Shown: one piece after another, positions 27,005-63,261 of the stretch
Numbering within the stretch: the first letter of the stretch is position 1
Layout of the letters: the number at the start of each line of letters is the position of its first letter
From: Octopus sinensis
Taxonomy: Eukaryota
Length of the DNA: 64,000 nt
Reading direction: 5' to 3'
Assembly: GCF_006345805.1 (NCBI RefSeq)
Contig: NC_043011.1
Coordinates: 34,422,464-34,486,463, forward strand
Made by a program: the position numbers and the translations under genes
Notes under the pieces: model-generated
The model's database searches: none
What the model saw: the letters and a program-made list of their open reading frames with translations, nothing else
What the model was told of the DNA's origin: nothing

Positions 27005-27068
27005 ATGGAAACGAAAGTGATCCTATTTGCTGTGATTTGTATACTTTCTGTAGTTATACCTACTGAAG
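27005..27068 (+). CDS. ITGB: Integrin beta coding exon 1 (signal peptide [22 protein letters not shown]), ends phase 1
   Basis: Hydrophobic N-terminus. Acceptor ttctttcttccag lies immediately before A-ATG; donor GT at 27069. Confidence 0.85.
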
Positions 27069-37283: not shown

Positions 37284-38530
37284 TGAGTTGCTGAAACCCC
37301 CTTTGGTCATGTCTGACCATGGGATTGTACCTAGAAAGTTCCATTCCAAGGCATATGTCTGAGCAAAGTTGTTTTATGGAAGACCAGCAGTTGCCCAGGC
37401 ATACCGGCTTCCCCTCTCCATGCCACCGGTGTTATCCAAAAGAAAGGCAAAGGCTAATATAGATTGGCATCACCAACGTCAGAACTCATTTCTACAGCTG
37501 AGTGAACTAGAGCAACATGAAATAAAGTGTCTTGCTCAAGAATACAACACACAGCCCAGTTAGGAATTCAAACTCAAAACCTCACGATCGTAAGCCCGAC
37601 ACTCTAACCACTGAGCCATGTGCCTTCACATATATACATATATTAAAGAAAAATTTAATTGGTGAAAATTTAATTGGTGAAAATGCGCCAGGGTCAGCAT
37701 TGCCTTTCATCTTTTCAAGGTTGATAAAATAAGCACCAATTGAGCACTGGGGTCAATCTAATTAACTTAGCCCCTCCCACGAAATTGCTGGCCTTGTTCC
37801 AAAATTTGAAACCATTAGTGTGTTAGAATTTTGGCATTGGTTTGTCAGAATTGGCCTCCTTGTGACATTTAGTTGACCTCACTTTTAAATGGTTTGAGGT
37901 ACAAATCCTATGAGGGTTAGTGCTGGCTCTGATTTTTGTTTGGGGTGGGGGTGAGGGATCAATAAAAGTAAATACCAGTCAATTTGTTTGATTAAACCCT
38001 TCAAGGCAGTGAACCAGCTTGAGTACCTTGGTCCTTCTATATGACTTAATCTATTTTGGTCCTTCTCTCCCCAGGTACAATATGTAAACATGCCGAAACC
38101 TGTGCACAGTGTTTCACTTTGCACAAAGATTGCACCTGGTGTGCAGATGAGGTAAGGATATTTTTTTTGTTTGATTTCTTAGTTTATATTTTTATTTGGT
38201 TTTGTAATTTGTGCTCTGAGGTTTATTAGTTTTCTTTTATATGTTATTCTTCAAAGTAAATGAATTTTGTTTTTGTGTTTTTTTTTTTTGGTTTGCCAAA
38301 ATAACTGCTTGCTTAACATAAGTATAATCCCACAAGCACACACAAACATTTTTGTGCATGTGCTCACACAAAACGCATAAATAATAAACATATACATGTC
38401 TGTATACACACACACAACACACACACACACACACACACACACATTGTTGAATGCTTCAGCTCCAAACTCCACTTTTCACAATGATTGTGCCTCTTACCAT
38501 GCTGTCTGTGATCGATTGGATTTTTCACAT

Positions 38531-38677: not shown

Positions 38678-38728
<51 letters not shown>

Positions 38729-39852
38729 TGAGTTGCTGAAACCCCCTTTGGTCATGTCTGACCATGGGATTGTACCTAGAAAGTTCCCTTCCAAGGCATA
38801 TGTCTGAGCAAAGTTGTTTTATGGAAGACCAGCAGTTGCCCAGGCATACCGGCTTCCCCTCTCCATGCCACCGGTGTTATCCAAAAGAAAGCAAAGGCTA
38901 ATATAGATTGGCATCACCAACGTCAGAACTCATTTCTACAGCTGAGTGAACTAGAGCAACATGAAATAAAGTGTCTTGCTCAAGAATACAACACACAGCC
39001 CAGTTAGGAATTCAAACTCAAAACCTCACGATCGTAAGCCCGACACTCTAACCACTGAGCCATGTGCCTTCACATATATACATATATTAAAGAAAAATTT
39101 AATTGGTGAAAATTTAATTGGTGAAAATGCGCCAGGGTCAGCATTGCCTTTCATCTTTTCAAGGTTGATAAAATAAGCACCAGTTGAGCACTGGGGTCAA
39201 TCTAATTAACTTAGCCCCTCCCACGAAATTGCTGGCCTTGTTCCAAAATTTGAAACCATTAGTGTGTTAGAATTTTGGCATTGGTTTGTCAGAATTGGCC
39301 TCCTTGTGACATTTAGTTGACCTCACTTTTAAATGGTTTGAGGTACAAATCCTATGAGGGTTAGTGCTGGCTCTGATTTTTGTTTGGGGTGGGGGTGGGG
39401 GTGAGGGATCAATAAAAGTAAATACCAGTCAATTTGTTTGATTAAACCCTTCAAGGCAGTGAACCAGCTTGAGTACCTTGGTCCTTCTATATGACTTAAT
39501 CTATTTTGGTCCTTCTCTCCCCAGGTACAATATGTAAACATGCCGAAACCTGTGCACAGTGTTTCACTTTGCACAAAGATTGCACCTGGTGTGCAGATGA
39601 GGTAAGGATATTTTTTTTGTTTGATTTCTTAGTTTATATTTTTATTTGGTTTTGTAATTTGTGCTCTGAGGTTTATTAGTTTTCTTTTATATGTTATTCT
39701 TCAAAGTAAATGAATTTTGTTTTTGTGTTTTTTTTTTTTGGTTTGCCAAAATAACTGCTTGCTTAACATAAGTATAATCCCACAAGCACACACAAACATT
39801 TTTGTGCATGTGCTCACACAAAACGCATAAATAATAAACATATACATGTCTG

Positions 39853-39895
<43 letters not shown>

Positions 39896-42333
39896 TGTCA
39901 GATGTTGTTAAACAAAACTGGTTACAATGCACTTTGCATCATTTTGAACTTTCAAATGATGCGACCCTGCTGGCTAAGATTGGAAGGTTAGTGCGTAGCA
40001 GGTTTACCCATTTGCAACTGAAGTGTGCTGAAGCAATATGAAATGAAGTCTTTTGCTCAGGAACGGAACCCACTGCTCAGTCTGAAAATTAAAGCCACAA
40101 TCTGGTGATTATGAGTGTAACACCTACACCACCAGGCCATGCACCTTCACACATACATACATACATACATACATGCATACATTTGAACTATTGGGTTGGT
40201 GCGTAATTATTGCAGCCTTTTTTTCAACAAATTTTATTTAGTGTGTATACTGAAAAGTTTCTGGCTTTGGGTAAAGGAGGATCAGTTAATTATGGTTTTA
40301 TTCAAAATATTCCTCTTTCAGATTCACATACTTATTGCAGCAGTCCTTCAGTTTTTCTAAGTCCTGTAAAAGAACTCTGAAGGTTGGGCCTCGAACCAGT
40401 CCTTTCATGATACCTTTAAAGCCAGGAACTTTACAGCACTCCCTTTTATATACACATCATCATCATCATCATCATCATCGTTTAACGTCCGTTCTCCATG
40501 CTAGCATGGGTTGGACGGTTCGACCGGGGATCTGGGAAGCCAGAAGGCTGCACCAGGCTCCAGTCTGATCTGGCAGTGTTTCTACAGCTGGATGCCCTTC
40601 CTAATGCCAACCACTCCGTGAGTGTAGTGGGTGCTTTTTACGTGCCACCTGCACAGGTGCCAGGCGAGGCTGACAACAGCCATGATCGGATTGGTGCATT
40701 TTATGTGCCACCGGCACGGAAGCCAGTTAAGGAGGCGCTGGCATTGGCCACGATTCGGATAGTGCTTTTTACGTGCCACCGGCACGGAAGCCAGTCTAGG
40801 CGGCACTGGCATCAGCCACATATGTATATATATTGGAAAATGTGTGAAATCCTTGGTACGGTTGGGTATATTTGAAAAAGGAAAAGGATGACTTCACTGG
40901 TAGTTCTAATTAATTTAATTTTCTAATATTATAATATAAGTTAATTTTACAGTTTGGTTTGTAGATCTACACACACACACACACACACATACACACACAC
41001 ACATACACACACTTGCACACACTCATATGCACACACATATATGTATATGGAGGCGCAATGGCCCAGTGGTTAGGGCAGCGGACTCGCGGTCATAGGATCG
41101 TGGTTTCGATTCCCAGACCGGGCGTTGTGAGTGTTTATTGAGCGAAAACACCTAAAAGTTCCACGAGGCTCCGGCAGGGGATGGTGGCGATCCCTGCTGT
41201 ACTCTTTCATCACAACTTTCTCTCACTCTTACTTCCTGTTTCTGTTGTATCTGTATTTCAAAGGGCCGGCCTTGTCACTCTCTGTGTCACGCTGAATATC
41301 CCCAGAACTACGTTAGGGGTACACGTGTCTGTGGAGTGCTCAGCCACTTACACGTTAATTTCACGAGCAGGCTGTTCCGTTGATTCGGATCAACCGGAAC
41401 CCTCGTCGTCGTAACCGACGGAGTGCTTCCATATGTATATATATATATATTGGGTTGTCCAGAAAGTTTGTGCCAATTTATAGTAGCTTACCTTTCAACT
41501 TATTTTAGAACATGGTTGAGTCCATAAAATAGGATTTGACTACACCTCCATTTAGAGCACAGTTTAAGCTATCTTTTCGTGGAAGAAGGTTTATGCTCCT
41601 ATAACCAGTGTTAATTCTGTAACCCTTTAAAATGGAAGATAAGGAAGTTCATTTTTGGCACTTGATGCTTTGGAAACCAGTCAAAAATTGCTGCAGCTCA
41701 GCTGGGATGTGTTACCCCACCCTCCATATTCACCAGATATTGGTCCTTCGGATTCTAACTTATTCAGGTCTCTGCAGAATAGTCTCAATGGTAAAAATTT
41801 CAATTCCTTGGATGATGTAAAAAGATACTTTGATGAATTCTTTGCCATGAAACCACCTCAATTCTGGGAAGAGGGTATTTTCAAGTTAAGGGAAAGATGG
41901 AGACGCATTGTGCAATAAAATGGTTCATATTTGGTTGACTAAAAATGTAATGGCAAGTATTTATTGACCTTTTTCTTTCCTTTAAAAATCGGCACAAACT
42001 TTCCGGACAACCCAATGTATATGTGGGTGTATATTTTGCTTATGTATGTTTGCATATGTATTTATCAAGATCATTTTCTGTCATTGTAGGTATTCCAGAG
42101 TGGCCGAACCAAATACACCAGGTGTGACATAGAAGACAATCTAATAAAGAAGAAATGCAACAGCATCATTAATCCAGACAATGATTTGCAATTTATCAAG
42201 GTATAACTTTATTGCTTTTGGTGATTGATAGTAATTTGGGATTTTATTACAGATGGTTTACTCTTGTCATTTGATCACTTGAAAAGAGAACAATGATGAC
42301 AATCCCACCACCATAAGTATCACCACCTCCTTC

Positions 42334-48699: not shown

Positions 48700-49746
48700 T
48701 GTGCATATGTTGTATAGTTTTTGTATCTGGTTTGCAAGATTCTTTATGTGAATCTGTGTTGAAACAAATTTTGTTGTGCCTAGGGAGAGTCATTATGCCA
48801 ATATTATTAACACACTCACTGGTTCAATTATACTCCTTCATTATTAGTCAATTGGTTAAATATCCAACTAACTAACTGATTGTTTAATTTGTTTTGTCTT
48901 TGTTGAAGTCCTTTAGTTGTTACTTTCCACTGACCATTGACTTAGTCTGTTATAGAGGCTGCGTTTGTTTGAGATCTTGTTGTATGCATGTGTGTACATG
49001 CCTGTGTGTGTGTGTGCTTGTGTATGTATGTATTCTGCATATTCATGTTTGATATGAATATCTGGCTTTAGCGAAGCTGCCTCAACATATTCCATCAGAC
49101 TTATGTGGGCTTGGAAAAATAAATGTTAAAACGATGATGAAATGATGGTGAAAATGATGGTGAGGATTTATGTTGTAAAGAGAAATATATTTTAATCTTT
49201 AATTGATAAATCACCTACTTTTAATTACCGAACACTAATTATTAATTTCTAATTAATAAACATTGTTAACAACTATTTCAGAATGAAAACCTACGAGATG
49301 AAATAGGAAATAAAACCGGTATTCATATCCAACCCCAGGTGATCAACTTAAAGTTAAGACCCAGTAAGTATTTGCTAATATATATATATATATATAAAAT
49401 TATTTAACAATTAAGGACAACTTCTTAATAAGGAATCTTAACAAGAAATTATCAGGTAGATAGCGTGAAAAACCTCATAAGAGAAAAAATTTTGAAAATA
49501 ATTCTTTCTTATTGAACATATTAATTTATATATAGAGGGCATTATTATACATACATGCCACACGCTACAAGGGACAATTAGTCATTTCTACCAAAAATTT
49601 TACTTATCATACCCAATGCAATTTTTTCAAAGCAAGACATTTAAAAAATGAATTTAATCTTGTATCACCTATGATAAGTAAAATTTTTGGTAGAAATGAC
49701 TAATTGTCCCTCGTAGCATGTGGCATGTATGTATAATAATGCCCTC

Positions 49747-49782: not shown

Positions 49783-52700
49783 CAACAAAATCTCCTTAAT
49801 CTAGGAACTTTTATATAATTTATTACTCTAGCCATAATAAGAAATACAAGGGACAATCACACTTGTATTGATTTATGTATAGTATAAACAACGAAATTAG
49901 CATAAACCAAAACACCATAATGCTAAGAACCCAGTAACAAGTTCAACCCTGTATGAATGAAGGGCAATTTAGAACAATGAGGCCATGAGATATAAATGAT
50001 TCACAGAAAACAAGTATATCAAACATATATTGTCATCATCAGCTGCCTAACAAATATCATTATGTTTTTGATATATTTGTATATTTTGGGCTTCTTTTTG
50101 TTCCCATTTTCGGAATTCACTAAGAAGACTTGTTTTGCCCACAGCTATTGTGTAATTATGTGTGTATGTGGGTGCACATGTATGTATGTGCGTATGTGCT
50201 TGTACATGAGTATGTAATCATCTTTTACCATGTCTATTTCTATCAAGAGAAAGAGAGAGAGAGAGGAAGTAAGAGAGGATTTTTATTCCAATACTCAAAG
50301 AAAGATGAAAAACAAAAAAATCTGATCTAGCCAGATTTGAACTCCAAACATAAAGAATCAGAACCATTACTGCCTGTCATTTATGTGACATTCTAACTTA
50401 TACCAATGAACTTATTGATACTTAATCAACCACTGGAAAAAAAGAAGAAAAAAAAATCATGTCAAAGGTCAAAATAAAAAGAAACAAGTCCATGACAAGA
50501 TTTAAATCGCTTACTATATTTGATGACATAAAAGACACATGGCAATATTAGATGCATTCCAATTTTAGCAGCACATATATAAACAGCAAAATGTCTGTGT
50601 GTGTGTCCTTTATACAAATCCACAATTTTTCAGTTAGAGGGCTCACACTTTTTATGGTCATTCTAAATCGTCCAAGTGTGGTCATGCACATTTTTACATT
50701 CCCCCAGTCACCAAAAAAAGCCATTAAAAAATCAATAGAAGTGACTTTTTTGTGAATTTTCTATCCAAAACCCAATCAAAATGCCCGCAACTTGATACGC
50801 CAATTGAAAGCTTGCTAGCTGTATGTGATTGGTCGGAGATTTGGACAGTACTCATGTGTATGTGCGCATGCACACAGCTGTATATGCATGCACTAGCACT
50901 ATAAAAGAGTTTTTAATGCATTAAAGCAAGTAATATAGGTCTAACTTCACATATGGGACTTGGGGTTAATTTTTTGAGACATTATTTTTGGGGAAAAAGT
51001 ACAGTTTACATTAATGGAAACCCTAGGAGATTTTTCCCTTTTGTTGTTCTTTTCCTGCCTTGCAAGATACTTGATAACCTCTCTAGTGCCACTGTCATGA
51101 GAAAAAAAAAATCACACAGTACACAGTAGAGTTGTTGGTATTAGGGATGATATCCAGTTGTAGAAACCATGCCAAAGCTGACATTGGAGCACGATGCAGC
51201 TCACCAGATAACATCAAACCATCCAACTAATGCCAACATAGAAAATGGGACATTAAACGATGATAATGATGAACTTATAAACTCTTGCTGCTTTTTTTAC
51301 TGTCAGTATTTAAATTCTTGCCTGGGTTTTTGTCTACTTTCAGGAAAGCCTCACAGAATAGAGCTGGCCTATCGGGAAGCTAAAGACAGTGCTGTTGACC
51401 TGTATGTCCTTATGGATCTCTCTGCTTCAATGAAACGTAGTAAGGAGACGTTGTCAAAACTTGGACAAACACTTGGTAAGACCCATCCATCAATTCATCC
51501 ATATTTTTCACTCACAATTCCTGGGAGGGTCATGGGGGTAAAATCCTCAGGCATGTCCTCCATAGGGTCCTATCAGAAGCTAATTTCATTTGACTTCCTG
51601 GTTGGATTCCTAAGTACGACCAACTGAGACAATGGTCATTACCAAACCTTCCCATTTTTGGTCTACCCATGGGTTTCCTGTTGTTCGGTTTGGCTTGAAG
51701 AAGAATCCATCTTGAAATTCTTTCCTTCAGCATTCTAATTACATGTCTTTAGTACCAGGGCTTTGACCTCTCAGTGTGGAAAAAATCCACAGCTTAAGCT
51801 AAGGGGCCTCCCTGATCTCTGAGCTACACAGCCTGTTGAGTTACATTACTCCAGAGATCTTTCAAAGGAACCTTATTTTGGCTGAATGTATTTGCAATCG
51901 TACTCTTTTGCTCATTTCCCAAAATTTCATGATCATTGGTGAGAATAGGCACAATGATTGCTTTATTTTTTGTTGTCAATGTTATTTTTATTGCTTTACA
52001 TTTTATGTGACGTTAGGAAGGGCATCCAGCTGTAGAGACTCGTAGAGCTTGTGACAGTCCTCTGGATCACAAGTTCCTGTTGAACTCTTCAACTCTTGTC
52101 AGCATGGAAGACAGATATTAAATGACAGGAATGAGGATGATGATGTTGCTATGATTGTAAGATATTTGGGGGACAGATAAACAATTATTTCTAATTTAGA
52201 CACAAGGACAGAAATTTTGAAAGGGAGTGAGGTTAGTGGATGCCATCAACTTGTGCTTTATTTCAGCGACCTTGGTAGAATGATGGGCAAAGCTGGCCTC
52301 AGCTTGGTTTCCTAAACAATTAGAAATACTACAAGGCATTTTATTCAATTCTCTGACAATTCTTCCACTCAGTCATTCTATAGACAGATAAATAATAACT
52401 AACTTGGAAGCAAGAAAGATACAGACCAGTAGTATTAGTTGTGGTGGTGGTGGTGGTGGCAATGATGGGTGTGAGCAAAGGTATGGGCCATGTTTAAGAA
52501 GCTTACTTTTGAAGTATGGCCACATTTGCATACCACTGTGGGATTAGATCTAATAGTTTTGGGTTCAATTCCATGATGTGTCACCTTGATTAAGTGTCTT
52601 CTATTATATGACCCCAAGTCTATCATAGCCATGAGTCAACCATAACATCAGAAGGTCCAATCAGTTTTCAGTTGACCATGGTATCAGGTTAAACATAGTC

Positions 52701-54107
52701 TTGGGTTGGTACAAATATAGACAAACTGACTGACAGACAGAGAGACAGATTGACTGACTGACACAAATGTACTCAGACATGCTATGTATATGTATGTATG
52801 TTCCATCTACTTCTCTACAGCTAAAGAAATGAAGAAGATTACCAAAAAATTCTTGCTTGGATTTGGATCCTACGTTGAGAAAGAAATACCGCCATTTGTT
52901 TTCACTGATAGCAACATAACAATGTAAGTACAAGGAACACACACACACTCACACACACACACACACACAAACATATCATGAGGTATCATAGCATCAGTCA
53001 ATGTCGGATGCTGTTATACATCGCTGGTCACAATCTGCTTTGCATTGTTGTAACTTTCGAATGATACCACCCCACTTGCTAAGATAGGCAGGGCAATATT
53101 TCCCCTGAATGGAATGCTAGTCTGTTGCAGGGTCACCCATTTACAGCTGAGTGGACTGGAGCAACATAAAATAAAGTGTTTTGCTCAATAATACAATGTA
53201 CCACCCAGTCTGGAAATTGAAATAATGATCTTGCATTCATCAGTGCAACAGCTTAACGTGGGGTGTGGGTGTCTACATGTAAGTTAGTGGCTCTAGTTCA
53301 CTGAAGCTACTGGATTTATTGTGTGTATAAAAATATCGACTACTTCTTTCTCTGGGATTAGTCAAGTGATGTATATTTCCAGTGAGAACTCAATAATGCT
53401 TAAAAATCAAGACTGTTCATCATTTTTTCAGTCTATAGAAAAATAGTTACATTATCCAGGTTACACACATATAAATGCACAAAGACACACAAACACAAGA
53501 TTTAAAAATGTGTACTACTATAACTTTCATGCTTTGATGAACAGTAATCAGACAGGCTTGTATAGCATGTCATGTCCCATCCAAGCATGAAACTTAAGAG
53601 GAGCTCACATTTAAATCTTGTTTTTTTTTTATTAAATGATACTTATCTCTCACTGGATAGAGTCCTTTTTTTTTTATTGATCCTAAACCGTGCTCTCTCT
53701 CTCACATAAATATAAATAAATAATATATACAACAGAAAAATATGAGTCAGAGGTTGTGCAACCATCTTAGGGATAGATGTATCCTTAGGTACTCCTGGTG
53801 TATTGCCTCACTATGTATAGTCCTAGCTATAAGGTATACAGTAGTTGGTAATTTAAAGGTAAATCTATGGTTTAATATATATTGAAAAGAAAAGAAATGG
53901 AGCAGTAATTAACAATGGGAAGTTGATCATTGGTATTAAAAAGTCATAGTTTAATTGTAGTTCAGAACCATTTACAGCTGTTTCTGTTTAATCAAATCGA
54001 AGTAAATTTGCATTTATCTCGTTCCATTTAACAAACATCAAAATGGTTTAGAAGATTATAATTAGGAGAAAAAGGGAAATGAAAAGAAAAGGAAAAGGCA
54101 TATATAT

Positions 54108-54168
<61 letters not shown>

Positions 54169-57100
54169 CTGTATATGTATATAAATTATATACATGATAT
54201 GTGTATGTGTAACTATATATAGCATATGTATGTATATATGTGTATGTATGTGTGTGTGTATGTATATAAGGTGCATTCAAAAAGTATCTGGGTTAATTTT
54301 TTTAATGCCACTACAACACATCTGTACTCTAGGTGTAACATCTGGCAACTGATACAGCTTACTAGCACAAAAACTTTCACATATATACACCAGGTGGTGC
54401 TATTAAGTTAGACATGGCCTGGACCAATACTGGCTGAAACCTATCAAAGTATGTGCAGGAAGGGTTGCTTTACTTCCCATCCAAAGGATGTTGCCTTTGT
54501 GGCATTAATTTTAGCAGGAAAAAATAAAGTCAGATACTTTTTGAATGCACTTATGTATATCCAACATGTTCAATTTTGTTGATTCCTGTTAGCAAGTGAA
54601 ACATGTGTAATGGTGAATAATTAATACCAAAAAATTTTTCTAGCTTCCTATTTTGTTTTGTGTGTGTGTGTGTGTGTGTATGCGTGTGTGCGTGCATGCG
54701 TGTCTGTGTGTGTGTGTGTGTGCACGTGCGTGTGTGTAAAGGCGTGTTGCTTAGGTCATGTGTTCAATTCCCGGCGATGTGTTGTATCCTTGAGCAAGTC
54801 ACTTTATTGCTCCAGTCCACTCTGCTGGCAAAAATGAGTAGTGCCTGTATTTCAAAGGACCAGCCTTGTCACACTCTGTGTCATGCTGAATCTCCCTAAG
54901 AACTAAGTTAAGGGTACACATGTCTGTGGAGTGCTCAGCCACTTGCACGTTAATTTCATGAGCAAGTTGTTCCATTTATTGTATCAGCTGGGACTCTCAT
55001 TGTAGCAACCGATGGAGTGCTCCTTTAATATATATATATATATTATATATATATATATACATATATACTTTATTAAAAGCAGCAGAAATATAACAAAAAC
55101 TGTTACTCAGAGTTTCACATTCCCGTTCGTCAGACAGTTTTGTTATATTTCTGCTGCTTTTAAATAAAGCATATTACTCTACCTCTAGTATTTGAGTACT
55201 CTTTTCCCCACCTTGTTTCACATTTATGTGCTTACTCCTGTATATATACACAGACACACACACACATATATATCTATATCTATATATATGTGTGTGTGTA
55301 TGTGTATAGAGAATATATAAGGAGTTTTCATCAACTGATGTAAAGTAATAGGTATGCACTATTAGTGCTCAGTTTGGTCTGGCACTCAGCCTCTGGTGGT
55401 TTGAACTACAGCTGAGAGTGTGATATTGAGACTGCCTATCAAAGTCAGCTAGAAGTGGTTACTCCTTGAGTGGGTAGATATAAATTGAAGCAAAAATGAA
55501 AATGCAAAATGTTCGGCATCACTTGAAAAAAAGCATTTAATTAAATTTAATTAAATTAAATGACTGTTTCAAGTGATACCAAACGTTTTGCTTCTTCATT
55601 TTTTCTTTAATCTCTGTCTCACTAATATATATATGTTTGTATGTGTGTAATACATATATATATAAGATATATGCATGTGTATATATATTGTATATACACA
55701 CATATGTGTGTATACATGGTTATATAGTGCATGTGTATATGTGTATGTATGTTATTAGAAAAAATGCTCACCTGACTTTTCTTTAATTTCACTTAGCTTA
55801 ATTTTCAAATATATTCTTTGATTCTCTTTTACTCAGGTGTTCTGACTGTGCTATGACTTATGATTACCGACATGTCATGAAGCTGTCTCCAAATGGTACC
55901 AAATTCTCTGTAAGCAGAATATCTTTCCTTCTTATTTGTGTGCCCCTATTGTTCCCTTTGTTTGGTTTGGTTTTGTAAAACGGTTGGTGTTAGGAAGAGC
56001 GTCCAGCCATAAAAACCCCGCCGAAACAGACAGTGAAGCCTGGTGTAGTCTTTTGCCTAACCAGCCCCACCAAACTATTCTACCTACACCAGCATGATGA
56101 CGATGATGATGATAATGGTGGTGATGATGATGATGATGACGATTTCCTTTTGCTGATTTGAAGAATTTCAAGAGAATTCTATATTGGGAACAGTTTCATA
56201 CTTTAGCATTTAAACTAGCCATATCTAGTCAAAATATTCTACCTGTTTTATGTTCAAACTGGCCAGATTCTGGCCTTTCACACCCACCCTACAATGTCAT
56301 TCTAAAAACAAACAGATACACCATTGAAATCTCGGAGCTGTGAGATAATGCATGACTAATTCAAAACAGGGTGAATAGATAAGCATTATATTTGACATAG
56401 TAATCGGAACGCTAAAGAGTCAAGTGACTACAGCGTTCTCTATAAGAACTTGCTTTGTCTTCCATTTAAAGAAATTAATTCTGAGCTGTGAATTTTGTGT
56501 CAATGAATCTACCATTTGTTCTATTTACAAAGTTCATGGAGATGATTTAGTTATCACTGATTCATTTATCACTCTGTGTGTGTGTGTGCGTGTGTGCGCA
56601 TGTGCGTGTGTGCGCATGTGCGTGTGTGTGCATTCAAAGAGGAAGAAAACGCCTGTGATCAATCAGGATATACATCTAAAACTACACTATGCAATGCCCT
56701 TTCTTTTTTAAGTTGGTAAGGTGTAATTTAAGGAAGATTTGACTGCTATTTCTAACAGGTCTAGCAAGTATTTAGAGGCTCTCTCATTAACTTGTAGTTG
56801 ATGTTGTTATTGTTGTTATATGTTAAGTTTAATAACTTGTCTTTGTTTGAAATCCAGCAAATGGTAGCTGCAGCTGAAATCTCTGGCAGTAACGACATTC
56901 CTGAAGCTGGGTTTGATGCTCTCATGCAAACATTGGTTTGTGAAGTAAGTAACAACAGGAGTTTTTTCACATTTCTAAATACTGAATATACATTCCTTGA
57001 GTAAACTGACCCTTTAAATTACTTTTGTGCCCCTTACATTAAATACCTTAACCTTCTCCTGTCCAAAGTATTTTCATAAGTTTGTCCTTAATGTCCTTAC

Positions 57101-60100
57101 TTGTTTACAGATTTTTAGTTAACCCAGCCCATGATTCATAAGTTCTGAGTAATAAATATAAAGTCTTCCCTTTAAAAATCCCAAGTAACTCTAGTCAGTG
57201 AAAAATATTGGGAATATGTATCATATATGATGCATGGATGCCAAGAAAATATGACCTGTGTTACATATGTGATGATACACATGAAAGAAAGGGTCAACCC
57301 TTTGCTTGTCCAAAGCATTTTTGTATGTTTGGACTAAACATCCATACTTGGTTTCAGGCTTTTAGTTAACCCTTGTTTCATATGGTCTGAATAAATAATA
57401 TAAAGCTTTCCTTTTGTAAGTCCCATCTTATTCTGGTAGCTGAAAAAAAAATGGCAATGTTTATCATATATGATCCATGGATGTCATGGAAATATGTCTT
57501 CAGGCATTTGCCATATTCTGAATGCCTTACTTCCCTGGGCATGGATACATTGAAACTCCGACATCTGGCAGCTGACTTGGCAGACACCCATAAAATTATT
57601 AACCGTCTTACTAACAATAACTCTGAGCACTTTTTGCAAACTCCACCTGTCTAACACCCATGGACATGTTTACAAAGTCAGAAAACAGCACAGCTCCCAT
57701 GACTTTCGTAAACATTTTTTCACGCTAAGAGTTGCTGAAGCATGGAACAAACTGCTGGCATCAGTTGTTAGTTGTCGGAGCACTGCATCCTTTAAAACTT
57801 CCATGCTTCCTGAGATTCCCTTACACTACACCTGATTTTCTCCCCTCCATACACACACAAGCATGTATCTGACTCATACACTGTTCACTTCCCGGACATT
57901 TGTACATTACTGCATGTGCTTTATATGCACTTTTGACAAGTTGTGGTGCACCTGAGCACTGTATACAATAATTTCATTATTATTATTATTATTATACACA
58001 GGACAGACAAATGGTTAACATTTTGCTTATACAAAGCAATTTCTTAAGTCTGTCCTAAACGTCCATGCTAATTTTCAGACTTTTAGTTAGTCCATGTTTC
58101 ACAAATTCTGAGTAATATAAAGCTTTCATTTCATAAGATCCCCCTAGTTACTCTGGTGGCTGAAAACACAATTGGGAATATGTATCATGTCTGATGCATG
58201 GATGCCAAGAGAATATATCTTGTGTGTTACATGTGATGCACAGGACAAGGAGGCGAACCTGCTGCGATCACTTTGGGATCTAAGATCTAAGATATACGAT
58301 ACAGGTGTCCTGCTTTAGAGTGATCTAAATCAAAAACTTCCATTAAAATTTCATATTGATTTATGTTCCAAACACAAGCTTAATAATGACCAGTTATTTT
58401 CATAGATTCTCTGCTACTTTCAAAATTAATCCAAACAAAAGCAGTGTATTTTTACAGAAATGTGGTAAGGAAAGGTTTGACCCTTTCCCTCCCATATTTT
58501 CACACAGCCATGCCATACAGAGTATTCAGGCTAAATTTGACCATTTGCCCAAAAGGAAAAGAAAACAATATCCCATCCAAAAATAAAAGTATTTAAAAAA
58601 ATATCAAGATACCAATTAGATTATACCTAGGAGATAACAGTTTACTCAATGTAGCAGCCTTCAGCTTCCAACACAGCTTCAAGGAGGCTTTAAAATCTAG
58701 TGTGTGCATTCTTCACTGTGTCCTGGGGAAGGTCTTTGAACATATCCTTGATATAAGCTACCAGCTTGGCTTTGGTGTTACTGGCAGAACAGTTGGTGTC
58801 TTTCTCAACCATGGGATTATAAATTCTCAACACATGGGATTATAAATGGAGGAATTAGGTTAGAACCTGGAGCTGGTAAAGTTGTAGAACTTCTACAACC
58901 ACTTCTAACTCTTTCTGGAGATATGGCAAGGAGCATATGGCATTCCAGCTGCAAACTTCTCTGACACACAGGATTGACCACAGGCTTCAGCAACTTTGGA
59001 ATTGATCCTAAGGCCCTGTTCAAAAATATGGGGTGGCATGATGTCACTGTCACTGGTGACATACACAAAGACCAACCATCACAGTTTCAGGGAACTTGGT
59101 TTTCGTGATATCCATGTCATGTCTTACACCCTTTACAGTGTTCACAGAGCATTGAACAGTTGTCACGATGTCAGCATTTTAGTACTTGGCATCAGTTGTC
59201 ATGACACAAGCAACCCTTTTCCAATATTTAAATGGCTTCATGTCCTCCAAGTCAGCTAACAGGTAAGGCGGCAAGCTAGCAGAAACGTTAGCATGCCGGG
59301 TGAAATGCTTAGTGGTATTTCGTCTGCCATTATGTTCTGAGTTCAAATTCCGCTGAGGTTGACTTTGCCTTTCATCCTTTTGGGATCGATAAATTAAGTA
59401 CCAGTTATGCACTGGGGGTCGATGTAATCGACTTAATCCCTTTGTTTGTCCTTGTTTGTCCCCTCTATGTTTAGCCCCTTCTGGGCAATAAAGAAATAAG
59501 TCAGCTAACAGTTTCTCAACTACAATTTTAATCTTTATGCCCTCCAACACCATTGACTGTTCACCAATATATGAAGCTGTTCCTGAAAAGAAAGGGAGAT
59601 ATAAAAAAAAAGATCGTCAAATTTGGCCTGAACACCCTGTATATTGATATATTTGTAACCACTTTTGTATGACATGTTTTGAATTTTATGAGTCTTTGTG
59701 ATCAATAAAAAAATTGTTATTATTATTATTACTTTTATCTTCTTTTTAGCAAATTGGTTGGCGAAGCAAATCAAGAAAACTGGTCCTTTTTATTGCTGGT
59801 AGCTCCTTCCATACTGCAGGCTCAGGAAAGGTATGGCAGTTTCTGTCAGTCTATTATTTTTACAGTTGTTTAGCCCTAGGTCATCCCTGATTCAGATGAA
59901 CTATTATCAAAGGTATTCCAGCCATGACCACCCCATTCTTATTTCTGTTCAGTGAACCTAGAACTACATTGTCCAACATGTTCATTTTTAAGACGATAGA
60001 GTGTGATTTTTTTTTTGGGGGGGGGCGGAGATTCGGCTGTTATTTCTAGCAACTCGAGTGACCATGTATTGACTTCTGATGGTCCCCTTTTTTTCTGGGA

Positions 60101-62007: not shown

Positions 62008-63261
62008 CACTACCACTACTGGAGTTATTGGATATATAGTCTCAGCACTTGAAGGAAGTTTCAGTTGATGAAAGCATTTGAGGTTCTTGATGTCATGATG
62101 ATACAATGTTCAGGTTTCACAACCATATAGGGGCATGGATATAAAAACAGCTGGGTAGACTGTAATCTTTGTCTGTGAATACATGTTTTATAAGTTTACT
62201 GAAATCTGAATAATCAGACTCAATTCTTTGTTCCACATCTTGCTCAGGATTGCATTTGGTGGAGAGCAAACTTTTAAGATATACAAAAAAGTGGCTGTGT
62301 GGTAAGTTGCTTGCTTACCAACCAGTTGATTCTGGGTTCAGTCCCACTGCATGGCACCTTGGGGCAAGTGTCTTCTACTATAGCCTTGGGCCAACCAAAG
62401 CCTTGTGAGTGGATTTGGTAGACAGAAACTGAAAGAAGCCCGTTATATATATGTTTATGTATATATATGTGTGTGTGTGTGTGTACGTGTGTGTGTTTGT
62501 GTGTCTGTGTTTATCCCTGCCAACATCGCTTGACAACCGGTGCTGGTGTGTTTATGTCCCTGTAACTTAGTGGTTCGGCAAAAGAGACTGATAGAATAAG
62601 TACTAGGCTTACAAAGAATAAGTCTTGGGGTCGATTTGCTTGACTAAAGGCGGTGCTCCAGCATGGCTGCAGTCAAATGACTGAAACAAGTAAAAAAAAA
62701 GGCTGCAGACCAGTTTCCTGGGACATTTTCTAGAGAAATAAGTACGGCACTAAAACTATCAAATATGGTGGCTCAATTTCTCCTGTTTCCCATCATGCAT
62801 CAGAAAATGAATGATCTCCATCTAACATGGATAATTACTAGCTCTGTCAAAAACCTGTATGTAAGGTCATGCTCATAACTGCCAGGCCCTTTCTTCACAA
62901 TCCACAGCCAGGACTTCACAAGTCTGCTTCACCCGCCTGTGGCTTCTGCTTCTTCTAGCTTTCGTTAAAGAGAAGCAATTACTGGTCTCTTTACATGAAT
63001 CTTTGCCGGATTCATTCAACGCAGCCTTCAGATGTAAAAATTCTCCCAGCCTCACTTTCCTTGGTTATATCACCACATCATGTCTAAGTTTAATCTTGCT
63101 TATTTCAGATATTTTCGTACTGTGATCTTTGTATTTAACACAATCCTTTTGCTGAATCTCTTTATTTTCTTCTCTTTATTCAGTTACTCGGAGTTGTGAA
63201 ACCAAACGATGAGCGATGTCATTTAACAGCAGCTGGAGAATATTCTGAGAGTAAAGTACAG
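27005..63261 (+). CDS. ITGB: Integrin beta subunit, 3'-partial; join(27005..27068, 38075..38151 [or identical 39525..39601], 42090..42200, 49282..49363, 51344..51475, 52821..52923, 55837..55909, 56858..56944, 59750..59830, 63184..63261); 888 nt = 296 aa, continues beyond the window
   Basis: All ten exons have AG/GT boundaries with compatible phases and no stop. The product is [76 protein letters not shown]...[12 protein letters not shown]...[13 protein letters not shown]...GFGSYVEK...[17 protein letters not shown]...IGWR...[22 protein letters not shown]. This matches the PSI (7 Cys) and betaI motifs of integrin beta chains. The symbol is family-level only; orthology is not determined. Confidence 0.96.
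27223..27326. repeat. (TTC)n microsatellite
   Basis: Direct inspection. Confidence 0.95.
27441..27838 (-). mobile_element. Diverged copy of the Merlin-like MITE
   Basis: Collinear with 17031-17444; left TIR partly deleted; no TSD. Confidence 0.7.
30372..30744 (+). mobile_element. Non-autonomous Helitron, same family
   Basis: Near-identical to 14488-14870; ends CTAG|T. Confidence 0.85.
30769..31230 (+). mobile_element. Retrozyme/Penelope-pLTR-like element: ~100 bp imperfect direct repeats (offset 359 bp) around a hammerhead-containing core
   Basis: 30769-30870 and 31128-31230 share tagtgaca.ttatagttttt..ttttggtaaaacattgcac; the hammerhead lies between them. Confidence 0.6.
30953..31023 (+). 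ncRNA. Type I hammerhead ribozyme motif (intact core, weakened stem II)
   Basis: Stem I gtcgagtggtcccta/tagggaactctcgac (13 of 15 pairs); CTGATGA at 30968-30974; stem II gtcta-tggaat-tagct; GAAA at 30991; stem III actgac-tg-gtcagt; GUA triplet ending at 31008. Confidence 0.85.
31215..32110 (+). mobile_element. Older Helitron-like element
   Basis: Ends ccaggaattaccagg-tacgtcagCTAG|T; the 5' part shares gatgaaacttgaca with the young family; 5' end uncertain. Confidence 0.5.
32300..33485 (+). mobile_element. RTE-type LINE 3' fragment with a PHD-like Cys-rich insert, 3' UTR and (GAT)n tail
   Basis: ORF 32374-32769 (CLIC...CTQC...RC...C, then [26 protein letters not shown]). Degraded [15 protein letters not shown] and RGRSRK.W follow. 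The same 3' UTR recurs at approx. 40465-40830 (-), 52000-52145 (+), 55960-56145 (-) and 63590-63715 (+). Confidence 0.8.
34154..34340 (+). mobile_element. Second, decayed copy of the 2794-2980 hammerhead-bearing short repeat
   Basis: Collinear with 2794-2980; core reads CTGACGA AGAGC TCT GCTC AAAAT GTT (GAAAC changed to AAAAT). Confidence 0.75.
34780..35232 (+). mobile_element. tRNA-headed SINE family A with central (TA)n(TG)n; other copies near 10075-10285, 13843-14085 (-), 18553-18907, 45881-46255, 46645-47045 (-), 47575-47760 (-), 61245-61835 (-, split), 62291-62698
   Basis: gagtggctgtgtggtaag...ggttcagtcccact head and aaatgactgaaacaagtaaaag tail recur across copies. Confidence 0.88.
37270..37628 (-). 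mobile_element. tRNA-headed SINE family D; other copies near 12780-13160, 38727-39072, 39893-40148, 52975-53250 (all -)
   Basis: Minus-strand head gtgaaggcacatggctcagtggttagagtg; shared cagctgagtgaactagagcaac body. Confidence 0.7.
38075..38151 (+). CDS. ITGB: Integrin beta PSI exon, copy 1 ([25 protein letters not shown]), 77 nt, phase 1 to 0
   Basis: ccttctctccccag acceptor, gtaagg donor, C..C..C.....C.WC PSI pattern. Confidence 0.93.
39525..39601 (+). CDS. ITGB: Integrin beta PSI exon, copy 2 (identical to 38075-38151)
   Basis: Same 77 nt and same splice sites as copy 1, at offset 1450. Confidence 0.85.
41450..42015 (+). mobile_element. Internally deleted mariner transposon
   Basis: TIRs ttgggttgtccagaaagtttgtgcc / ggcacaaactttccggacaacccaa; TA on the left; transposase N-terminus (MEDKEVHF) joined to C-terminus [19 protein letters not shown]. 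Confidence 0.9.
42090..42200 (+). CDS. ITGB: Integrin beta exon ([37 protein letters not shown]), end of PSI
   Basis: RCD..NL...C..IINP motif; tgtag acceptor, gtataa donor; 111 nt, phase 0 to 0. Confidence 0.93.
42430..42730 (+). mobile_element. LINE-type 3' end with (AAT)n tail; shorter copy at approx. 45150-45292
   Basis: Shared tagtcatgatgggtatactgggcttc...ctctctcactc-(aat)n; clade not determined. Confidence 0.55.
44108..44555 (+). mobile_element. Same Merlin-like MITE with an expanded (CCCTAA)n tract
   Basis: Perfect TSD gacaaatc at 44100-44107 and 44556-44563; perfect 29 bp TIRs. Confidence 0.88.
46358..46616. repeat. Foldback element, ~105 bp arms
   Basis: tattctataattat...gtcatttcaactacc / ggtagttgaaatgac...ataattatagaata. 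Confidence 0.8.
47172..47554 (-). mobile_element. Non-autonomous Helitron, same family
   Basis: Reverse complement of 14488-14870; A|TC ... CTAG|T on the minus strand. Confidence 0.88.
49282..49363 (+). CDS. ITGB: Integrin beta exon ([27 protein letters not shown]), hybrid domain N-part
   Basis: IQPQ...L.LRP motif; tttcag acceptor, gtaagt donor; phase 0 to 1. Confidence 0.93.
49525..49756. repeat. Foldback element, ~87 bp near-perfect arms
   Basis: tatatagagggcattattatacatacatgccac...ttttacttatcata / tatgataagtaaaa...gtggcatgtatgtataataatgccctctatata. Confidence 0.88.
51344..51475 (+). CDS. ITGB: Integrin beta exon carrying MIDAS DxSxS ([20 protein letters not shown])
   Basis: tttcag acceptor, gtaaga donor; 132 nt, phase 1 to 1. 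Confidence 0.96.
52821..52923 (+). CDS. ITGB: Integrin beta exon ([33 protein letters not shown])
   Basis: GFGS.V[DE]K..PF motif; ctacag acceptor, gtaagt donor; phase 1 to 2. Confidence 0.95.
54267..54554. mobile_element. Mariner-derived MITE
   Basis: TIRs aaggtgcattcaaaaagtatctg / cagatactttttgaatgcactt in a TA context. Confidence 0.7.
55064..55173 (-). ncRNA. Type I hammerhead ribozyme motif with a ~37 bp stem I
   Basis: Minus strand reads ...aaaactgt CTGACGA ACG-GGAA-TGT GAAA CTCTGA GTA acagtttttg.... All conserved core positions are present and the flanking inverted repeat forms stem I. Confidence 0.85.
55837..55909 (+). CDS. ITGB: Integrin beta exon ([25 protein letters not shown]), specificity-determining loop
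   Basis: actcag acceptor, gtaagc donor; phase 2 to 0 fits both neighbours; C..C...Y.Y.HVM.L pattern. Confidence 0.92.
56858..56944 (+). CDS. ITGB: Integrin beta exon ([29 protein letters not shown])
   Basis: Matches the ISGN.D.PEGG.DA.MQ..VC motif; atccag acceptor, gtaagt donor. Confidence 0.96.
57497..57995 (+). mobile_element. CR1-type LINE 3' end with (ATT)n tail
   Basis: LPYSECL.SLG..TLKLR....DL..THKII; T.GH.YK..K.......[16 protein letters not shown]; attatt tail. Confidence 0.8.
58518..59639 (-). mobile_element. Degraded Tc1/mariner (maT-like) transposon, interrupted by a SINE
   Basis: TA-flanked TIRs cagagtattcaggctaaatttgac / gtcaaatttggcctgaacaccctg; minus strand [44 protein letters not shown]. 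Confidence 0.75.
59263..59497 (+). mobile_element. tRNA-headed SINE family C; other copies near 1-215 (-), 11392-11625 (+), 42725-42955 (-), 43535-43685 (-), 63722-63900 (-)
   Basis: B box gagttcaaattcc; 14 bp TSD aagtcagctaacag at 59249-59262 and 59498-59511. Confidence 0.88.
59750..59830 (+). CDS. ITGB: Integrin beta exon ([27 protein letters not shown])
   Basis: Gapless match to IGWR....RLLVFSTDAGFH.AGDGK; tttttag acceptor, gtatgg donor. Confidence 0.94.
60615..60812. repeat. (TTC)/(CTC) polypyrimidine microsatellite
   Basis: Direct inspection. Confidence 0.9.
61480..61675 (-). mobile_element. Decayed hammerhead-bearing short repeat (AGAGC-GTAG-GCTC family), nested in the central microsatellite of a SINE; related remnant at approx. 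18050-18090 (-)
   Basis: Minus strand CTGTTGA AGAGC GTAG GCTC AAAAT GTA AAAG. The 18055 copy reads TTATCGA AGAGC GTAG GCTC GAAAC GTC. Confidence 0.6.
61843..62020. repeat. (ACT)/(GCT)/(ACC) compound microsatellite
   Basis: Direct inspection. Confidence 0.9.
63184..63261 (+). CDS. ITGB: Integrin beta exon ([26 protein letters not shown])
   Basis: PND..CHL....Y..S motif; attcag acceptor, gtatct donor. Confidence 0.95.

What the first reader, a model, noticed from the sequence alone, without database searches (positions are those of the whole stretch)
51415..59824. Integrin beta with a dismantled metal-ion triad (ADMIDAS, D251 and SyMBS Asn all lost)
Seen, by gapless motif alignment from memory using human beta3 numbering: D119, S121, S123, D217, P219 and E220 are kept. 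D126/D127 are Arg/Ser (CGT AGT, 51436-51441), N215 is Ser (AGT, 56888), D251 is Gly (GGT, 59798) and D259 is Ser (TCA, 59822); D158 is Glu, as in beta6. Known: D126/D127/D251 ligate ADMIDAS, D251 also supports MIDAS, and N215 ligates SyMBS. Human beta8 lacks ADMIDAS but keeps D251 and N215. Inference: this chain is more degenerate than beta8 yet keeps an intact frame and splice sites over 10 exons. It may have altered cation dependence, atypical activation or a non-RGD ligand. A-to-I recoding cannot restore any of these Asp/Asn codons.
Basis: partly seen in the sequence, partly recalled or inferred. Interest (0 to 1): 0.75.

Follow-up and report, generated by a model that had tools for sequence, protein, structure and literature searches.

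The report
Cephalopod integrin beta lacking ADMIDAS
The window holds the first ten coding exons of an already annotated octopus integrin beta gene, a fast-evolving but selectively maintained cephalopod paralogue that has lost one of its three cation sites (ADMIDAS) and single ligands of the other two, a natural variant useful for testing what those sites do.

Summary

The gene is 100% identical, over the 274 residues read from exons 2-10, to NCBI XP_036365518.1, "integrin beta pat-3", of Octopus sinensis. That protein is a full-length 792-aa integrin beta.

It is not a pseudogene or an assembly error:
- The same substitutions occur in O. bimaculoides, Argonauta hians, an octopus transcript and a more distant transcript.
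- dN/dS is 0.09-0.33.
- Only 9 of 154 universally conserved positions are changed in the clade, and three of them are N215, D251 and D259.

Octopus also has a canonical betaPS with every metal ligand, so this is an extra, faster-evolving paralogue.

"Dismantled triad" overstates the case:
- ADMIDAS is truly gone (D126, D127, D251, and the beta5-alpha6 Thr).
- MIDAS keeps D119, S121, S123 and E220.
- SyMBS keeps E158, D217, P219 and E220.

Loss of the ADMIDAS Asp pair is common in invertebrate betas (62 of 141 scorable representatives). D251G with N215S and D259S is unique to this clade.

Most likely it is a talin/kindlin-coupled, MIDAS-dependent integrin without ADMIDAS control. This is a new variant of a known kind and of moderate interest.

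The parts
27005..27068 (+). Coding exon 1: signal peptide [21 protein letters not shown] plus the first base of a Gly codon. Base 27004 follows an acceptor used by the longer N-terminal isoforms.
   Evidence: Exact match to residues 15-35 of XP_036365518.1; donor GT at 27069.
38075..38151 (+). Coding exon 2 (77 nt): first half of the PSI domain ([25 protein letters not shown]).
   Evidence: AG/GT borders; Pfam PSI_integrin E 2.7e-11.
39525..39601 (+). Exact second copy of exon 2 with identical splice sites, inside a 1.45-kb tandem duplication (37002-38443 and 38423-39892, 96.9% identical). Using both copies would shift the frame.
42090..42200 (+). Coding exon 3: second half of PSI and start of the hybrid domain ([37 protein letters not shown]).
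   Evidence: matches P0001, P0167 and Argonauta exon 3.
49282..49363 (+). Coding exon 4: hybrid domain strand ([27 protein letters not shown]).
51344..51475 (+). Coding exon 5: start of the betaI domain with the beta-MIDAS motif DLSASMKRS. DxSxS is kept (51415-51429). ADMIDAS D126/D127 are replaced by Arg-Ser (51436-51441).
   Evidence: alignment to beta6 DLSASMDDD.
52821..52923 (+). Coding exon 6: [12 protein letters not shown], with Glu (52877-52879) at the SyMBS D158 position.
55837..55909 (+). Coding exon 7: short specificity-determining loop CSDC followed by [20 protein letters not shown].
   Evidence: The CxxC loop length is the same as in canonical protostome betas.
56858..56944 (+). 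Coding exon 8: SyMBS/MIDAS loop [15 protein letters not shown]215 is Ser (56888-90); Asn 216, D217, P219 and E220 are kept.
59750..59830 (+). Coding exon 9: beta4-alpha5 loop [15 protein letters not shown]251 is Gly (59798-800) and D259 is Ser (59822-24). The Lys equivalent to beta3 R261 / beta1 Lys is kept (59828-30).
63184..63261 (+). Coding exon 10: [26 protein letters not shown]. The gene continues beyond the window; by analogy with the 22 coding exons of the Argonauta orthologue, 12 more would follow.

Best explanation
**Shown**
- The window carries the 5' half of the Octopus sinensis/vulgaris gene annotated as "integrin beta pat-3" (XP_036365518.1).
- The product is a complete type-I integrin beta: signal peptide, PSI, hybrid, betaI, EGF repeats, beta-tail, transmembrane helix, and a cytoplasmic tail with NPIY and NPLY.
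- It is a cephalopod-lineage paralogue, additional to a canonical betaPS. It is transcribed in at least two other species and evolves about twice as fast as the canonical gene.
- It is nevertheless under purifying selection, strongest in the betaI domain.
- Its betaI domain has lost the whole ADMIDAS network: D126 and D127, the beta4-alpha5 Asp D251, and the beta5-alpha6 Thr.
- It keeps the direct MIDAS ligands and four of five SyMBS ligands.
- It keeps the beta6-alpha7 Asp-Ser motif and the Lys that inserts into the alpha-subunit propeller.

**Inferred**
- It still pairs with an alpha subunit.
- It still binds an acidic ligand residue through a MIDAS Mg2+, buttressed by a weakened or rebuilt SyMBS.
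- It still links to talin and kindlin.
- Without an ADMIDAS Ca2+ it lacks the Ca2+-dependent latch between the alpha1 helix and the beta6-alpha7 loop. Its affinity should then be less switch-like (closed state higher, open state lower), little affected by Ca2+ inhibition or by Mn2+/high-Mg2+ activation at that site, and its MIDAS should be less negatively charged.
- This is the behaviour measured for ADMIDAS mutants of alpha5beta1 and for alphaVbeta6-NN.
For: **Identity**
- 100% identity of the 274 aa spliced from the window to P0167, which is XP_036365518.1.
- Pfam Integrin_beta E 1.5e-61 and PSI_integrin E 2.7e-11.
- End-to-end alignment to human beta1, E 6e-159.
- AF2 model with mean pLDDT 81; its headpiece superposes on alphaVbeta6 and alpha5beta1 headpieces at TM 0.90-0.91, rmsd about 2.5 A.

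**Conservation of the substitutions**
- O. bimaculoides, Argonauta hians, the octopus metatranscriptome contig L001 and the contig L002 all have S215, G251 and E158.
- All have non-Asp residues at 126 and 127, and S or E at 259.

**Expression**
- L001 and L002 are intronless 2.8-3.0 kb contigs carrying the whole CDS.
- SRR3401912, the source of L001, is an octopus metatranscriptome (PMC11662614).

**Selection**
- dN/dS is 0.27-0.33 against L001 (dS about 0.3). It is 0.18-0.19 in the betaI part.
- dN/dS is 0.09-0.12 against Argonauta.
- S121 uses TCT, TCC, TCG and TCA in the four lineages.
- Only 9 of 154 positions that are at least 90% conserved in 49 other betas are changed in all clade members. 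Seven lie in betaI, and they include N215, D251 and D259.

**Paralogy**
- Canonical betaPS with DD, N, D, D and T exists in O. sinensis, O. bimaculoides, Argonauta and the cuttlefish Acanthosepion (Sepia) pharaonis.
- It is 44% identical to this gene in the same genome.
- The canonical gene is 88% identical between Octopus and Argonauta. This gene is 74-75% identical over the same species pair (75% over the window part, 74% full length).

**Retained coupling elements**
- The K-D-S-(A/S)-N loop, the GK of AGSGK, YDRRE, NPIY and NPLY.

**Residue roles and expected phenotype**
- Site composition, and the shift of the ADMIDAS ion to D251 on opening: PMC12443065.
- Beta8 N8/N9, the beta5-alpha6 Thr, the beta6-alpha7 DS motif, and a 6-fold higher affinity for alphaVbeta6-NN: PMC6889490.
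- ADMIDAS mutation reduces the gap between open and closed affinities: PMC9265148.
Against: - No experiment or metal-bound structure exists. AlphaFold models no ions, and the model coordinates could not be inspected.
- D251 is the outer-shell MIDAS residue and is Asp in 132 of the 144 rows of the 150-sequence alignment that cover this position. Its loss could instead abolish stable Mg2+ binding.
- In beta3, the A252D/D126A/D127A triple mutant nearly lost ligand binding (PMC3792891). That mutant also carries A252D, so it does not isolate the effect of removing the ADMIDAS. In beta8, mutating N8/N9 to Ala lowered affinity 3-7 fold. Removing the site need not be activating.
- N215S may also weaken SyMBS, which supports MIDAS.
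- The alpha partner, the ligands and the tissue of expression are unknown.
- dN/dS of about 0.3 in the closest pair is high for an integrin beta, which fits partly relaxed constraint.
Confidence: 0.6

Rival explanations
1. The betaI domain no longer binds ligand through a metal ion at all. On this view it is a pseudo-integrin beta: a subunit kept for pairing, trafficking, scaffolding or dominant-negative regulation of alpha subunits, or one that binds ligand independently of cations, as proposed for the mouse beta2-like protein Pactolus.
For: - D251, N215 and D259 are each conserved in at least 92% of the representatives that cover the position, and all three are lost.
- All side-chain ligands of ADMIDAS are gone.
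- The clade evolves about twice as fast as the canonical paralogue.
- Pactolus (PDB 2iue) shows that degenerate integrin betas exist.
Against: - D119, S121, S123, E220, P219, E158 and D217 (Glu in one lineage) stay fixed across lineages that are only 56% identical overall.
- There is synonymous turnover at the Ser codons.
- BetaI is the most constrained part of the sequence, with dN/dS of 0.18.
- Talin/kindlin NPxY motifs and the full ectodomain are kept, unlike Pactolus as I recall it.
Confidence: 0.22
2. It is functionally an ordinary integrin. On this view the substitutions are compensated: Asn216 takes the place of N215 at SyMBS, and Ser252/Ser253 or water replace D251. ADMIDAS is simply dispensable, as in many invertebrate betas, so nothing distinctive follows.
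For: - Loss of the DD pair is common: 62 of 141 scorable representatives.
- N215S is seen in 8 other representatives, and D251N/E/G in 9 others, 8 of which also lack DD.
- Asn216 and Ser253 are invariant in the clade.
Against: - A canonical betaPS is retained alongside it in every cephalopod examined. That argues for a division of labour.
- ADMIDAS mutants of vertebrate integrins do change affinity regulation measurably.
Confidence: 0.15
3. It is a decaying gene copy (pseudogene or relaxed duplicate), or an assembly or annotation artefact.
For: - Protein divergence is faster than in the canonical paralogue.
- A 1.45-kb tandem duplication holds a second copy of exon 2.
- Older O. bimaculoides models were fragmentary and began in a transposon-derived exon.
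Against: - Full-length open frames exist in O. sinensis, Argonauta and two transcripts.
- dN/dS is 0.09-0.33.
- The same residues are seen in independent genomes and in RNA.
- Only 9 of 154 universally conserved positions are changed.
Confidence: 0.03

Closest known systems
Canonical protostome integrin betaPS / PAT-3 / vertebrate beta1 (e.g. O. sinensis betaPS XP_029645647.1; human beta1, PDB 7nwl)
   Same: Same domain order from end to end. It is colinear, with 44% identity to the octopus canonical paralogue and E 6e-159 to human beta1. DxSxS, E220, D217, the CxxC specificity loop, the beta6-alpha7 D-S motif, and the NPxY motifs are all shared.
   Different: It lacks D126/D127, N215, D251, D259 and the beta5-alpha6 Thr. 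Other changes are W to F at the membrane border, HDRRE to YDRRE and FEKE to FLLSKE. Its divergence is about twofold faster. It is a separate paralogue, not the PAT-3 orthologue its NCBI name suggests.
Vertebrate integrin beta8 (alphaVbeta8; PMC6889490)
   Same: No ADMIDAS metal site. The beta5-alpha6 Thr that is otherwise universal in vertebrate betas is replaced (Gln in beta8; Pro or Asn here).
   Different: - Beta8 has Asn-Asn at positions 8 and 9. By my recollection of its sequence, not checked here, it keeps the SyMBS Asn; PMC6889490 implies it keeps the beta4-alpha5 Asp. The octopus protein has Arg-Ser and has lost both.
- Beta8 has a remodelled beta6-alpha7 loop and a tail that does not bind talin. 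The octopus protein keeps the D-S loop and the NPIY/NPLY motifs.
- There is no orthology. The nearest relatives are protostome betaPS proteins.
Other invertebrate betas without the ADMIDAS Asp pair (e.g. Haliotis betaPS-like XP_048243651.1; Bulinus KAH9520115.1; Nymphon KAG1672098.1; Notodromas A0A7R9BT47)
   Same: - Non-DD at positions 126 and 127.
- Frequent loss of the beta5-alpha6 Thr (odds ratio 25).
- Occasional D251N or G, and N215S.
- The Haliotis protein combines D127A, N215S and D251N.
   Different: They do not group with the cephalopod clade in a neighbour-joining tree. None combines G251, S215 and S259. These appear to be independent losses.
Pactolus (mouse integrin beta2-like protein, PDB 2iue)
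   Same: A lineage-specific integrin beta paralogue with a degenerate I-like domain. It is detected by sequence at E 1.5e-14 over residues 177-263 of the 274-aa window fragment.
   Different: From my own knowledge, not tested here, Pactolus is truncated, has an altered MIDAS and acts without an alpha chain. The octopus protein is full length with an intact DxSxS and E220.

Membership tests
Integrin beta subunit | N-terminal PSI domain with its Cys pattern | tested here: met
   Pfam PF17205, E 2.7e-11, residues 2-49 of the window fragment.
Integrin beta subunit | BetaI (VWA-like) domain inserted in the hybrid domain | tested here: met
   Pfam PF00362, E 1.5e-61; PDB beta6 E 2e-59; model TM 0.90 to beta6 and beta1 headpieces.
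Integrin beta subunit | EGF repeats, beta-tail, single TM helix, and a cytoplasmic tail with NPxY motifs | tested here: met
   These lie outside the window. They are present in the full protein P0167, which is 100% identical over the window part: PF23105, PF07965, PF08725; NPIY and NPLY aligned to beta1.
Integrin beta subunit | MIDAS: DxSxS, plus the Glu of the alpha2-alpha3 loop, plus the beta4-alpha5 Asp | tested here: inconclusive
   D119, S121, S123 and E220 are present and invariant in the clade. The outer-shell D251 is Gly. Metal occupancy cannot be tested with these tools.
Integrin beta subunit | ADMIDAS: Asp-Asp at beta-MIDAS positions 8 and 9 | tested here: not met
   Arg-Ser here; Ser-Thr in Argonauta; Pro-Ser in L002. 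This feature is not universal in the family: it is absent from 62 of 141 scorable representatives and from beta8.
Integrin beta subunit | SyMBS: D158, N215, D217, P219 and E220 | tested here: inconclusive
   E158, D217, P219 and E220 are kept. N215 is Ser, with an invariant Asn at 216.
Integrin beta subunit | Forms a heterodimer with an alpha subunit | not testable with these tools
   There is only indirect support. The Lys equivalent to beta3 R261 / beta1 Lys is invariant. The loop around it has low pLDDT in the monomer model.
BetaPS / PAT-3 orthogroup (the name given by NCBI) | Being the single canonical protostome beta orthologue of its genome | tested here: not met
   A separate canonical betaPS exists in O. 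sinensis, O. bimaculoides, O. vulgaris and Argonauta. It is closer to other molluscan betas (58-59% identity) than this gene is (43-45%).
Beta8-type atypical integrin | Asn-Asn at positions 8 and 9, a disengaged beta6-alpha7 loop without the (D/N)-S motif, and a tail that does not bind talin | tested here: not met
   This protein has Arg-Ser rather than Asn-Asn. The K-D-S-A-N loop is retained. NPIY and NPLY are retained. Criteria are taken from PMC6889490.

The most novel reading that the evidence does not exclude
Cephalopods may maintain, beside the canonical betaPS, a talin-coupled integrin beta that works with only the MIDAS cation, or MIDAS plus a rebuilt SyMBS. It would have no ADMIDAS and no beta4-alpha5 Asp. 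That would make it a naturally "unlatched" integrin whose affinity is set differently from all structurally studied betas, possibly as an adaptation to blood with seawater-like Ca2+ and Mg2+. The wider pattern may mark a recurrent, unrecognised class of ADMIDAS-less invertebrate integrins: the Asp pair, the beta5-alpha6 Thr and D251 tend to be lost together across invertebrate betas.
Probability: 0.3. Interest if true: 0.55.

Novelty: new variant of a known kind. Interest (0 to 1): 0.4.

Why it matters
The three betaI cation sites are the core of integrin ligand binding and allostery. Their roles have been worked out almost wholly in vertebrate integrins and by mutagenesis.

This clade offers a natural variant that is conserved and selectively maintained. 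It removes ADMIDAS and its partner Asp while keeping the talin/kindlin tail and the beta6-alpha7 loop. No vertebrate beta has that combination, not even beta8.

Comparing it with the canonical octopus betaPS would test directly whether ADMIDAS is what makes integrin affinity switch-like.

The survey also shows that ADMIDAS loss is widespread in invertebrates. Across lineages it goes together with loss of the beta5-alpha6 Thr.

The gene itself is already annotated, and no function is shown, so the value is that of a lead rather than a discovery.

Tried and rejected
The O. bimaculoides orthologue fragment P0001 was used instead.
2. The look-up of encoding contigs found no record for P0001 or P0167. 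The 3' half of the O. sinensis gene was therefore judged from the NCBI protein, not from DNA.
3. The first word-indexed protein search returned only three hits, two of them snake beta7-like fragments. That reflects the word index, not biology.
4. Literature searches found nothing on this protein: integrin with octopus and MIDAS, integrin beta with ADMIDAS and invertebrate, and integrin beta with cephalopod.
5. The taxon of SRR27666088 (L002/P0168) could not be established. I treat it as a more distant cephalopod because it shares the derived residues, but this is an inference.
6. Alternative betaI exons that might restore canonical residues were looked for among the five NCBI isoforms. There are none; the isoforms differ only at the N-terminus and at one residue, V/D 467.
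7. dS is saturated for Argonauta and L002 in several partitions. Only the L001 comparison is quantitatively reliable.
9. A Pfam scan of four intronic or upstream ORFs found only a sub-threshold PHD match.
10. Pseudogene and assembly-error readings were rejected, as set out under the rival explanations.

Full report
**What is in the window**

The window is eukaryotic, AT-rich and full of microsatellites and transposon fragments. On the + strand there is a split gene.

I located nine exons by reading frames and splice sites, and a tenth, the signal peptide, from the annotated protein. The coordinates are:
- 27005-27068
- 38075-38151
- 42090-42200
- 49282-49363
- 51344-51475
- 52821-52923
- 55837-55909
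- 56858-56944
- 59750-59830
- 63184-63261

All are bounded by AG and GT and join in one frame.

The 274 residues from exons 2-10 match Pfam PSI_integrin (E 2.7e-11) and Integrin_beta (E 1.5e-61). They also match human beta6, beta1, beta3, beta7, beta8 and beta2 structures.

The fragment is 100% identical to XP_036365518.1, "integrin beta pat-3 isoform X3" of Octopus sinensis, 792 aa. The O. vulgaris protein CAI9736014.1 is identical over this part. So the gene is already annotated, and the window is from O. sinensis or O. vulgaris. The gene runs off the 3' end of the window. The Argonauta orthologue has 22 coding exons.

**The observation**

HMMER alignments to beta6 and beta1 give the same residue equivalences as its gapless alignment from memory.

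| beta3 position | Here | Status |
|---|---|---|
| D119, S121, S123 | same | kept |
| D217, P219, E220 | same | kept |
| D126 | Arg | lost |
| D127 | Ser | lost |
| D158 | Glu (as in beta6) | conservative change |
| N215 | Ser | lost |
| D251 | Gly | lost |
| D259 | Ser | lost |

The remark that A-to-I editing cannot recreate Asp or Asn from CGT, AGT, GGT or TCA is correct by codon logic.

**Not an artefact, not a pseudogene**

The same pattern is found in several independent sources:
- O. bimaculoides (XP_014777706).
- Two Argonauta hians models (GAB1605708.1 and GAB1599522.1).
- L001, an intronless 2.76-kb contig from run SRR3401912. A paper describes that run as an octopus metatranscriptome (PMC11662614).
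- L002, an intronless 3.04-kb contig from SRR27666088. It is only 56% identical, and related sequences were seen on many other assembled contigs.

All of these have Ser215 (AGT), Gly251 (GGT) and Glu158. Positions 126 and 127 vary without ever being Asp: RS, ST or PS. Position 259 is Ser or Glu.

Pairwise dN/dS for the window part:

| Comparison | dN/dS | Note |
|---|---|---|
| vs L001, whole window part | 0.27-0.33 | dS about 0.3 |
| vs L001, betaI portion | 0.18-0.19 | |
| vs L001, PSI/hybrid | 0.40-0.54 | |
| vs Argonauta | 0.09-0.12 | dS near saturation |

The retained Ser121 is written TCT, TCC, TCG and TCA in the four lineages.

I then looked at 154 positions that are at least 90% conserved among 49 other bilaterian betas. 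Only nine are changed in all clade members, and seven of those lie in betaI: Y116V, P176M, N215S, D251G, D259S/E, G331T and one Leu to Val. The other two are the membrane-border Trp and one tail Glu. These beta3 numbers other than N215, D251 and D259 are my own count. This is targeted change, not decay.

**A paralogue beside a canonical gene**

A third protein search recovered canonical betaPS proteins from four cephalopods:
- O. sinensis (XP_029645647.1)
- O. bimaculoides
- O. vulgaris
- Argonauta
- the cuttlefish Acanthosepion (Sepia) pharaonis

All carry DLSNSMxDD, FVDK, SGNLDSPEGG, STDxxFHYAGDGK and FAVT.

Within O. sinensis the two betas are colinear and 44% identical. The canonical gene is 88% identical between Octopus and Argonauta. 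The divergent one is 74-75% identical over the same species pair, so it changes about twice as fast.

The nearest relatives of the divergent clade are canonical protostome betaPS/PAT-3 proteins at 42-47% identity. In a neighbour-joining tree it sits alone on a long branch. No orthologue outside cephalopods was found, but deep orthology cannot be excluded with these data.

**How unusual is the pattern?**

I tabulated the 147 closest 50%-identity cluster representatives that could be aligned; three further rows of the alignment are this clade. The counts below are over all 150 rows.
- The Asp-Asp pair is missing in 62 of the 141 non-clade representatives that could be scored. ADMIDAS loss is therefore common outside vertebrates.
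- N215 is Ser in 11 rows, 3 of them from this clade.
- D251 is Asp in 132 rows, Gly in 5 (3 from this clade), Asn in 4, Glu in 2 and Val in 1.
- Non-Asp at 251 goes with loss of the Asp pair: 8 of 62 against 1 of 79, Fisher p = 0.01.
- Loss of the pair goes strongly with loss of the beta5-alpha6 Thr: odds ratio 25, p = 1e-13.

These tests are not corrected for phylogeny. The full combination is seen only in the cephalopod clade.

**Further features outside the window**

These are read from the full protein.
- The beta5-alpha6 Thr is Pro in octopods and Asn in L002. That residue is Gln in beta8 and Thr in all other vertebrate betas (PMC6889490).
- The beta6-alpha7 loop keeps the Asp/Asn-Ser motif (KDSANIL).
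- The Lys of AGSGK, equivalent to beta3 R261, is kept.
- The tail keeps YDRRE, NPIY and NPLY.

An AlphaFold2 model built with 54 homologues has mean pLDDT 81. Its headpiece superposes on alphaVbeta6 and alpha5beta1 headpieces at TM 0.90-0.91. The coordinates could not be inspected.

**Interpretation**

The literature assigns the residues as follows (PMC12443065):

| Site | Residues |
|---|---|
| MIDAS | D119, S121, S123, E220, D251 |
| SyMBS | D158, N215, D217, P219 |
| ADMIDAS | D126, D127, the M335 carbonyl; the ion shifts to D251 on opening |

On that basis ADMIDAS is abolished here. MIDAS has lost only its outer-shell Asp. SyMBS has lost one of five ligands, and an invariant Asn lies one residue further on. 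"Dismantled triad" is therefore too strong.

The most likely working model is a heterodimeric, talin/kindlin-linked integrin that is MIDAS-dependent and lacks the ADMIDAS latch. The experimental precedents are:
- ADMIDAS mutation in alpha5beta1 raises closed-state affinity and lowers open-state affinity (PMC9265148).
- The NN mutant of alphaVbeta6 binds 6-fold more tightly (PMC6889490).
- Removing polar side chains at positions 8 and 9 altogether lowers affinity.
- The beta3 A252D/D126A/D127A triple mutant binds poorly (PMC3792891), although it also carries A252D.

So the direction of the effect is uncertain.

The main rival is that metal-dependent ligand binding is lost altogether. Strict conservation of the remaining MIDAS and SyMBS ligands across 56%-identical lineages argues against this. 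A link to the high Ca2+ and Mg2+ of cephalopod blood is my speculation.

**Comparison with known systems**

It works most like an ADMIDAS-less integrin such as beta8, but it is not a beta8-type protein:
- The residues at positions 8 and 9 differ.
- The beta6-alpha7 loop is retained.
- The talin-binding tail is retained.
- There is no orthology.

It is not the PAT-3/betaPS orthologue its name implies. It is a member of the integrin beta family with one common deviation (no ADMIDAS) and one rare one (no D251), plus N215S and D259S.

**Verdict**

The gene is known to annotation. Its metal-site make-up and cephalopod-wide conservation appear undescribed in the literature I could search. This is a new variant of a known kind and of moderate interest.

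Noticed in passing
window 37002-38443 and 38423-39892: A 1.45-kb tandem duplication, 96.9% identical, lies in intron 1. Each copy carries an exact copy of the 77-nt PSI exon with identical splice sites (38075-38151 and 39525-39601). Including both copies would shift the frame. The Argonauta locus has a single copy. It could be a recent duplication or an assembly artefact around microsatellites.
   Followed up: partly
window 56888-56890 and 59798-59800; L001, L002 and L003 at the same codons: The two invariant losses, N215S (AAY to AGT) and D251G (GAY to GGT), are both second-position A-to-G transitions. These are the changes A-to-I editing of the canonical codons would mimic. All four lineages use AGT and GGT. 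Ordinary transition bias explains this equally well: other lineages show D251N or G. "Hard-wiring" of an edited site is only a speculation.
   Followed up: no
alignment A1 (150 integrin beta sequences: 147 representatives plus three of this clade), not in the window: Across invertebrate and vertebrate betas, absence of the ADMIDAS Asp-Asp pair goes together with absence of the beta5-alpha6 Thr (41 of 51 against 10 of 71; odds ratio 25, p = 1e-13). It also goes with non-Asp at D251 (8 of 62 against 1 of 79, p = 0.01). The test is not corrected for phylogeny. It suggests a recurrent ADMIDAS-less class of betas.
   Followed up: partly
window 24199-24336 and 40965-41138: A repeated element encodes [14 protein letters not shown](R/H)RI(A/V)VS.PRPGVV. 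The old O. bimaculoides model P0001 (UPI0006954C52) starts inside such an element and splices into exon 3. That points to a mis-predicted or alternative first exon derived from a transposon.
   Followed up: no
window 41643-41915 (+), 9442-10014 (+), 32362-32766 (+): These are open frames in introns and upstream DNA. To my eye they look like a mariner-type transposase C-terminus ([10 protein letters not shown]...), a LINE reverse-transcriptase C-terminal part, and a PHD-like zinc finger. Pfam gave only a sub-threshold PHD match (E 5e-4) and nothing for the others.
   Followed up: partly
Argonauta hians GAB1605708.1 and GAB1599522.1 (P0004, P0154): Two near-identical copies of the divergent beta lie on different contigs, 20.96 Mb and 4.85 Mb. 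They differ at a few residues. They could be haplotigs or a recent duplication.
   Followed up: no
window 20001-22000: GC skew is -0.95 at 30% GC in this 2-kb block. This is presumably a long C-rich, G-poor simple repeat.
   Followed up: no
P0167 residue 467 (outside the window): The NCBI isoforms of the gene differ by Val or Asp at one position in the first EGF region, and by the N-terminal extension MLLLGFIQMDFNKR. The exon for that extension was not found on the + strand of the window.
   Followed up: no
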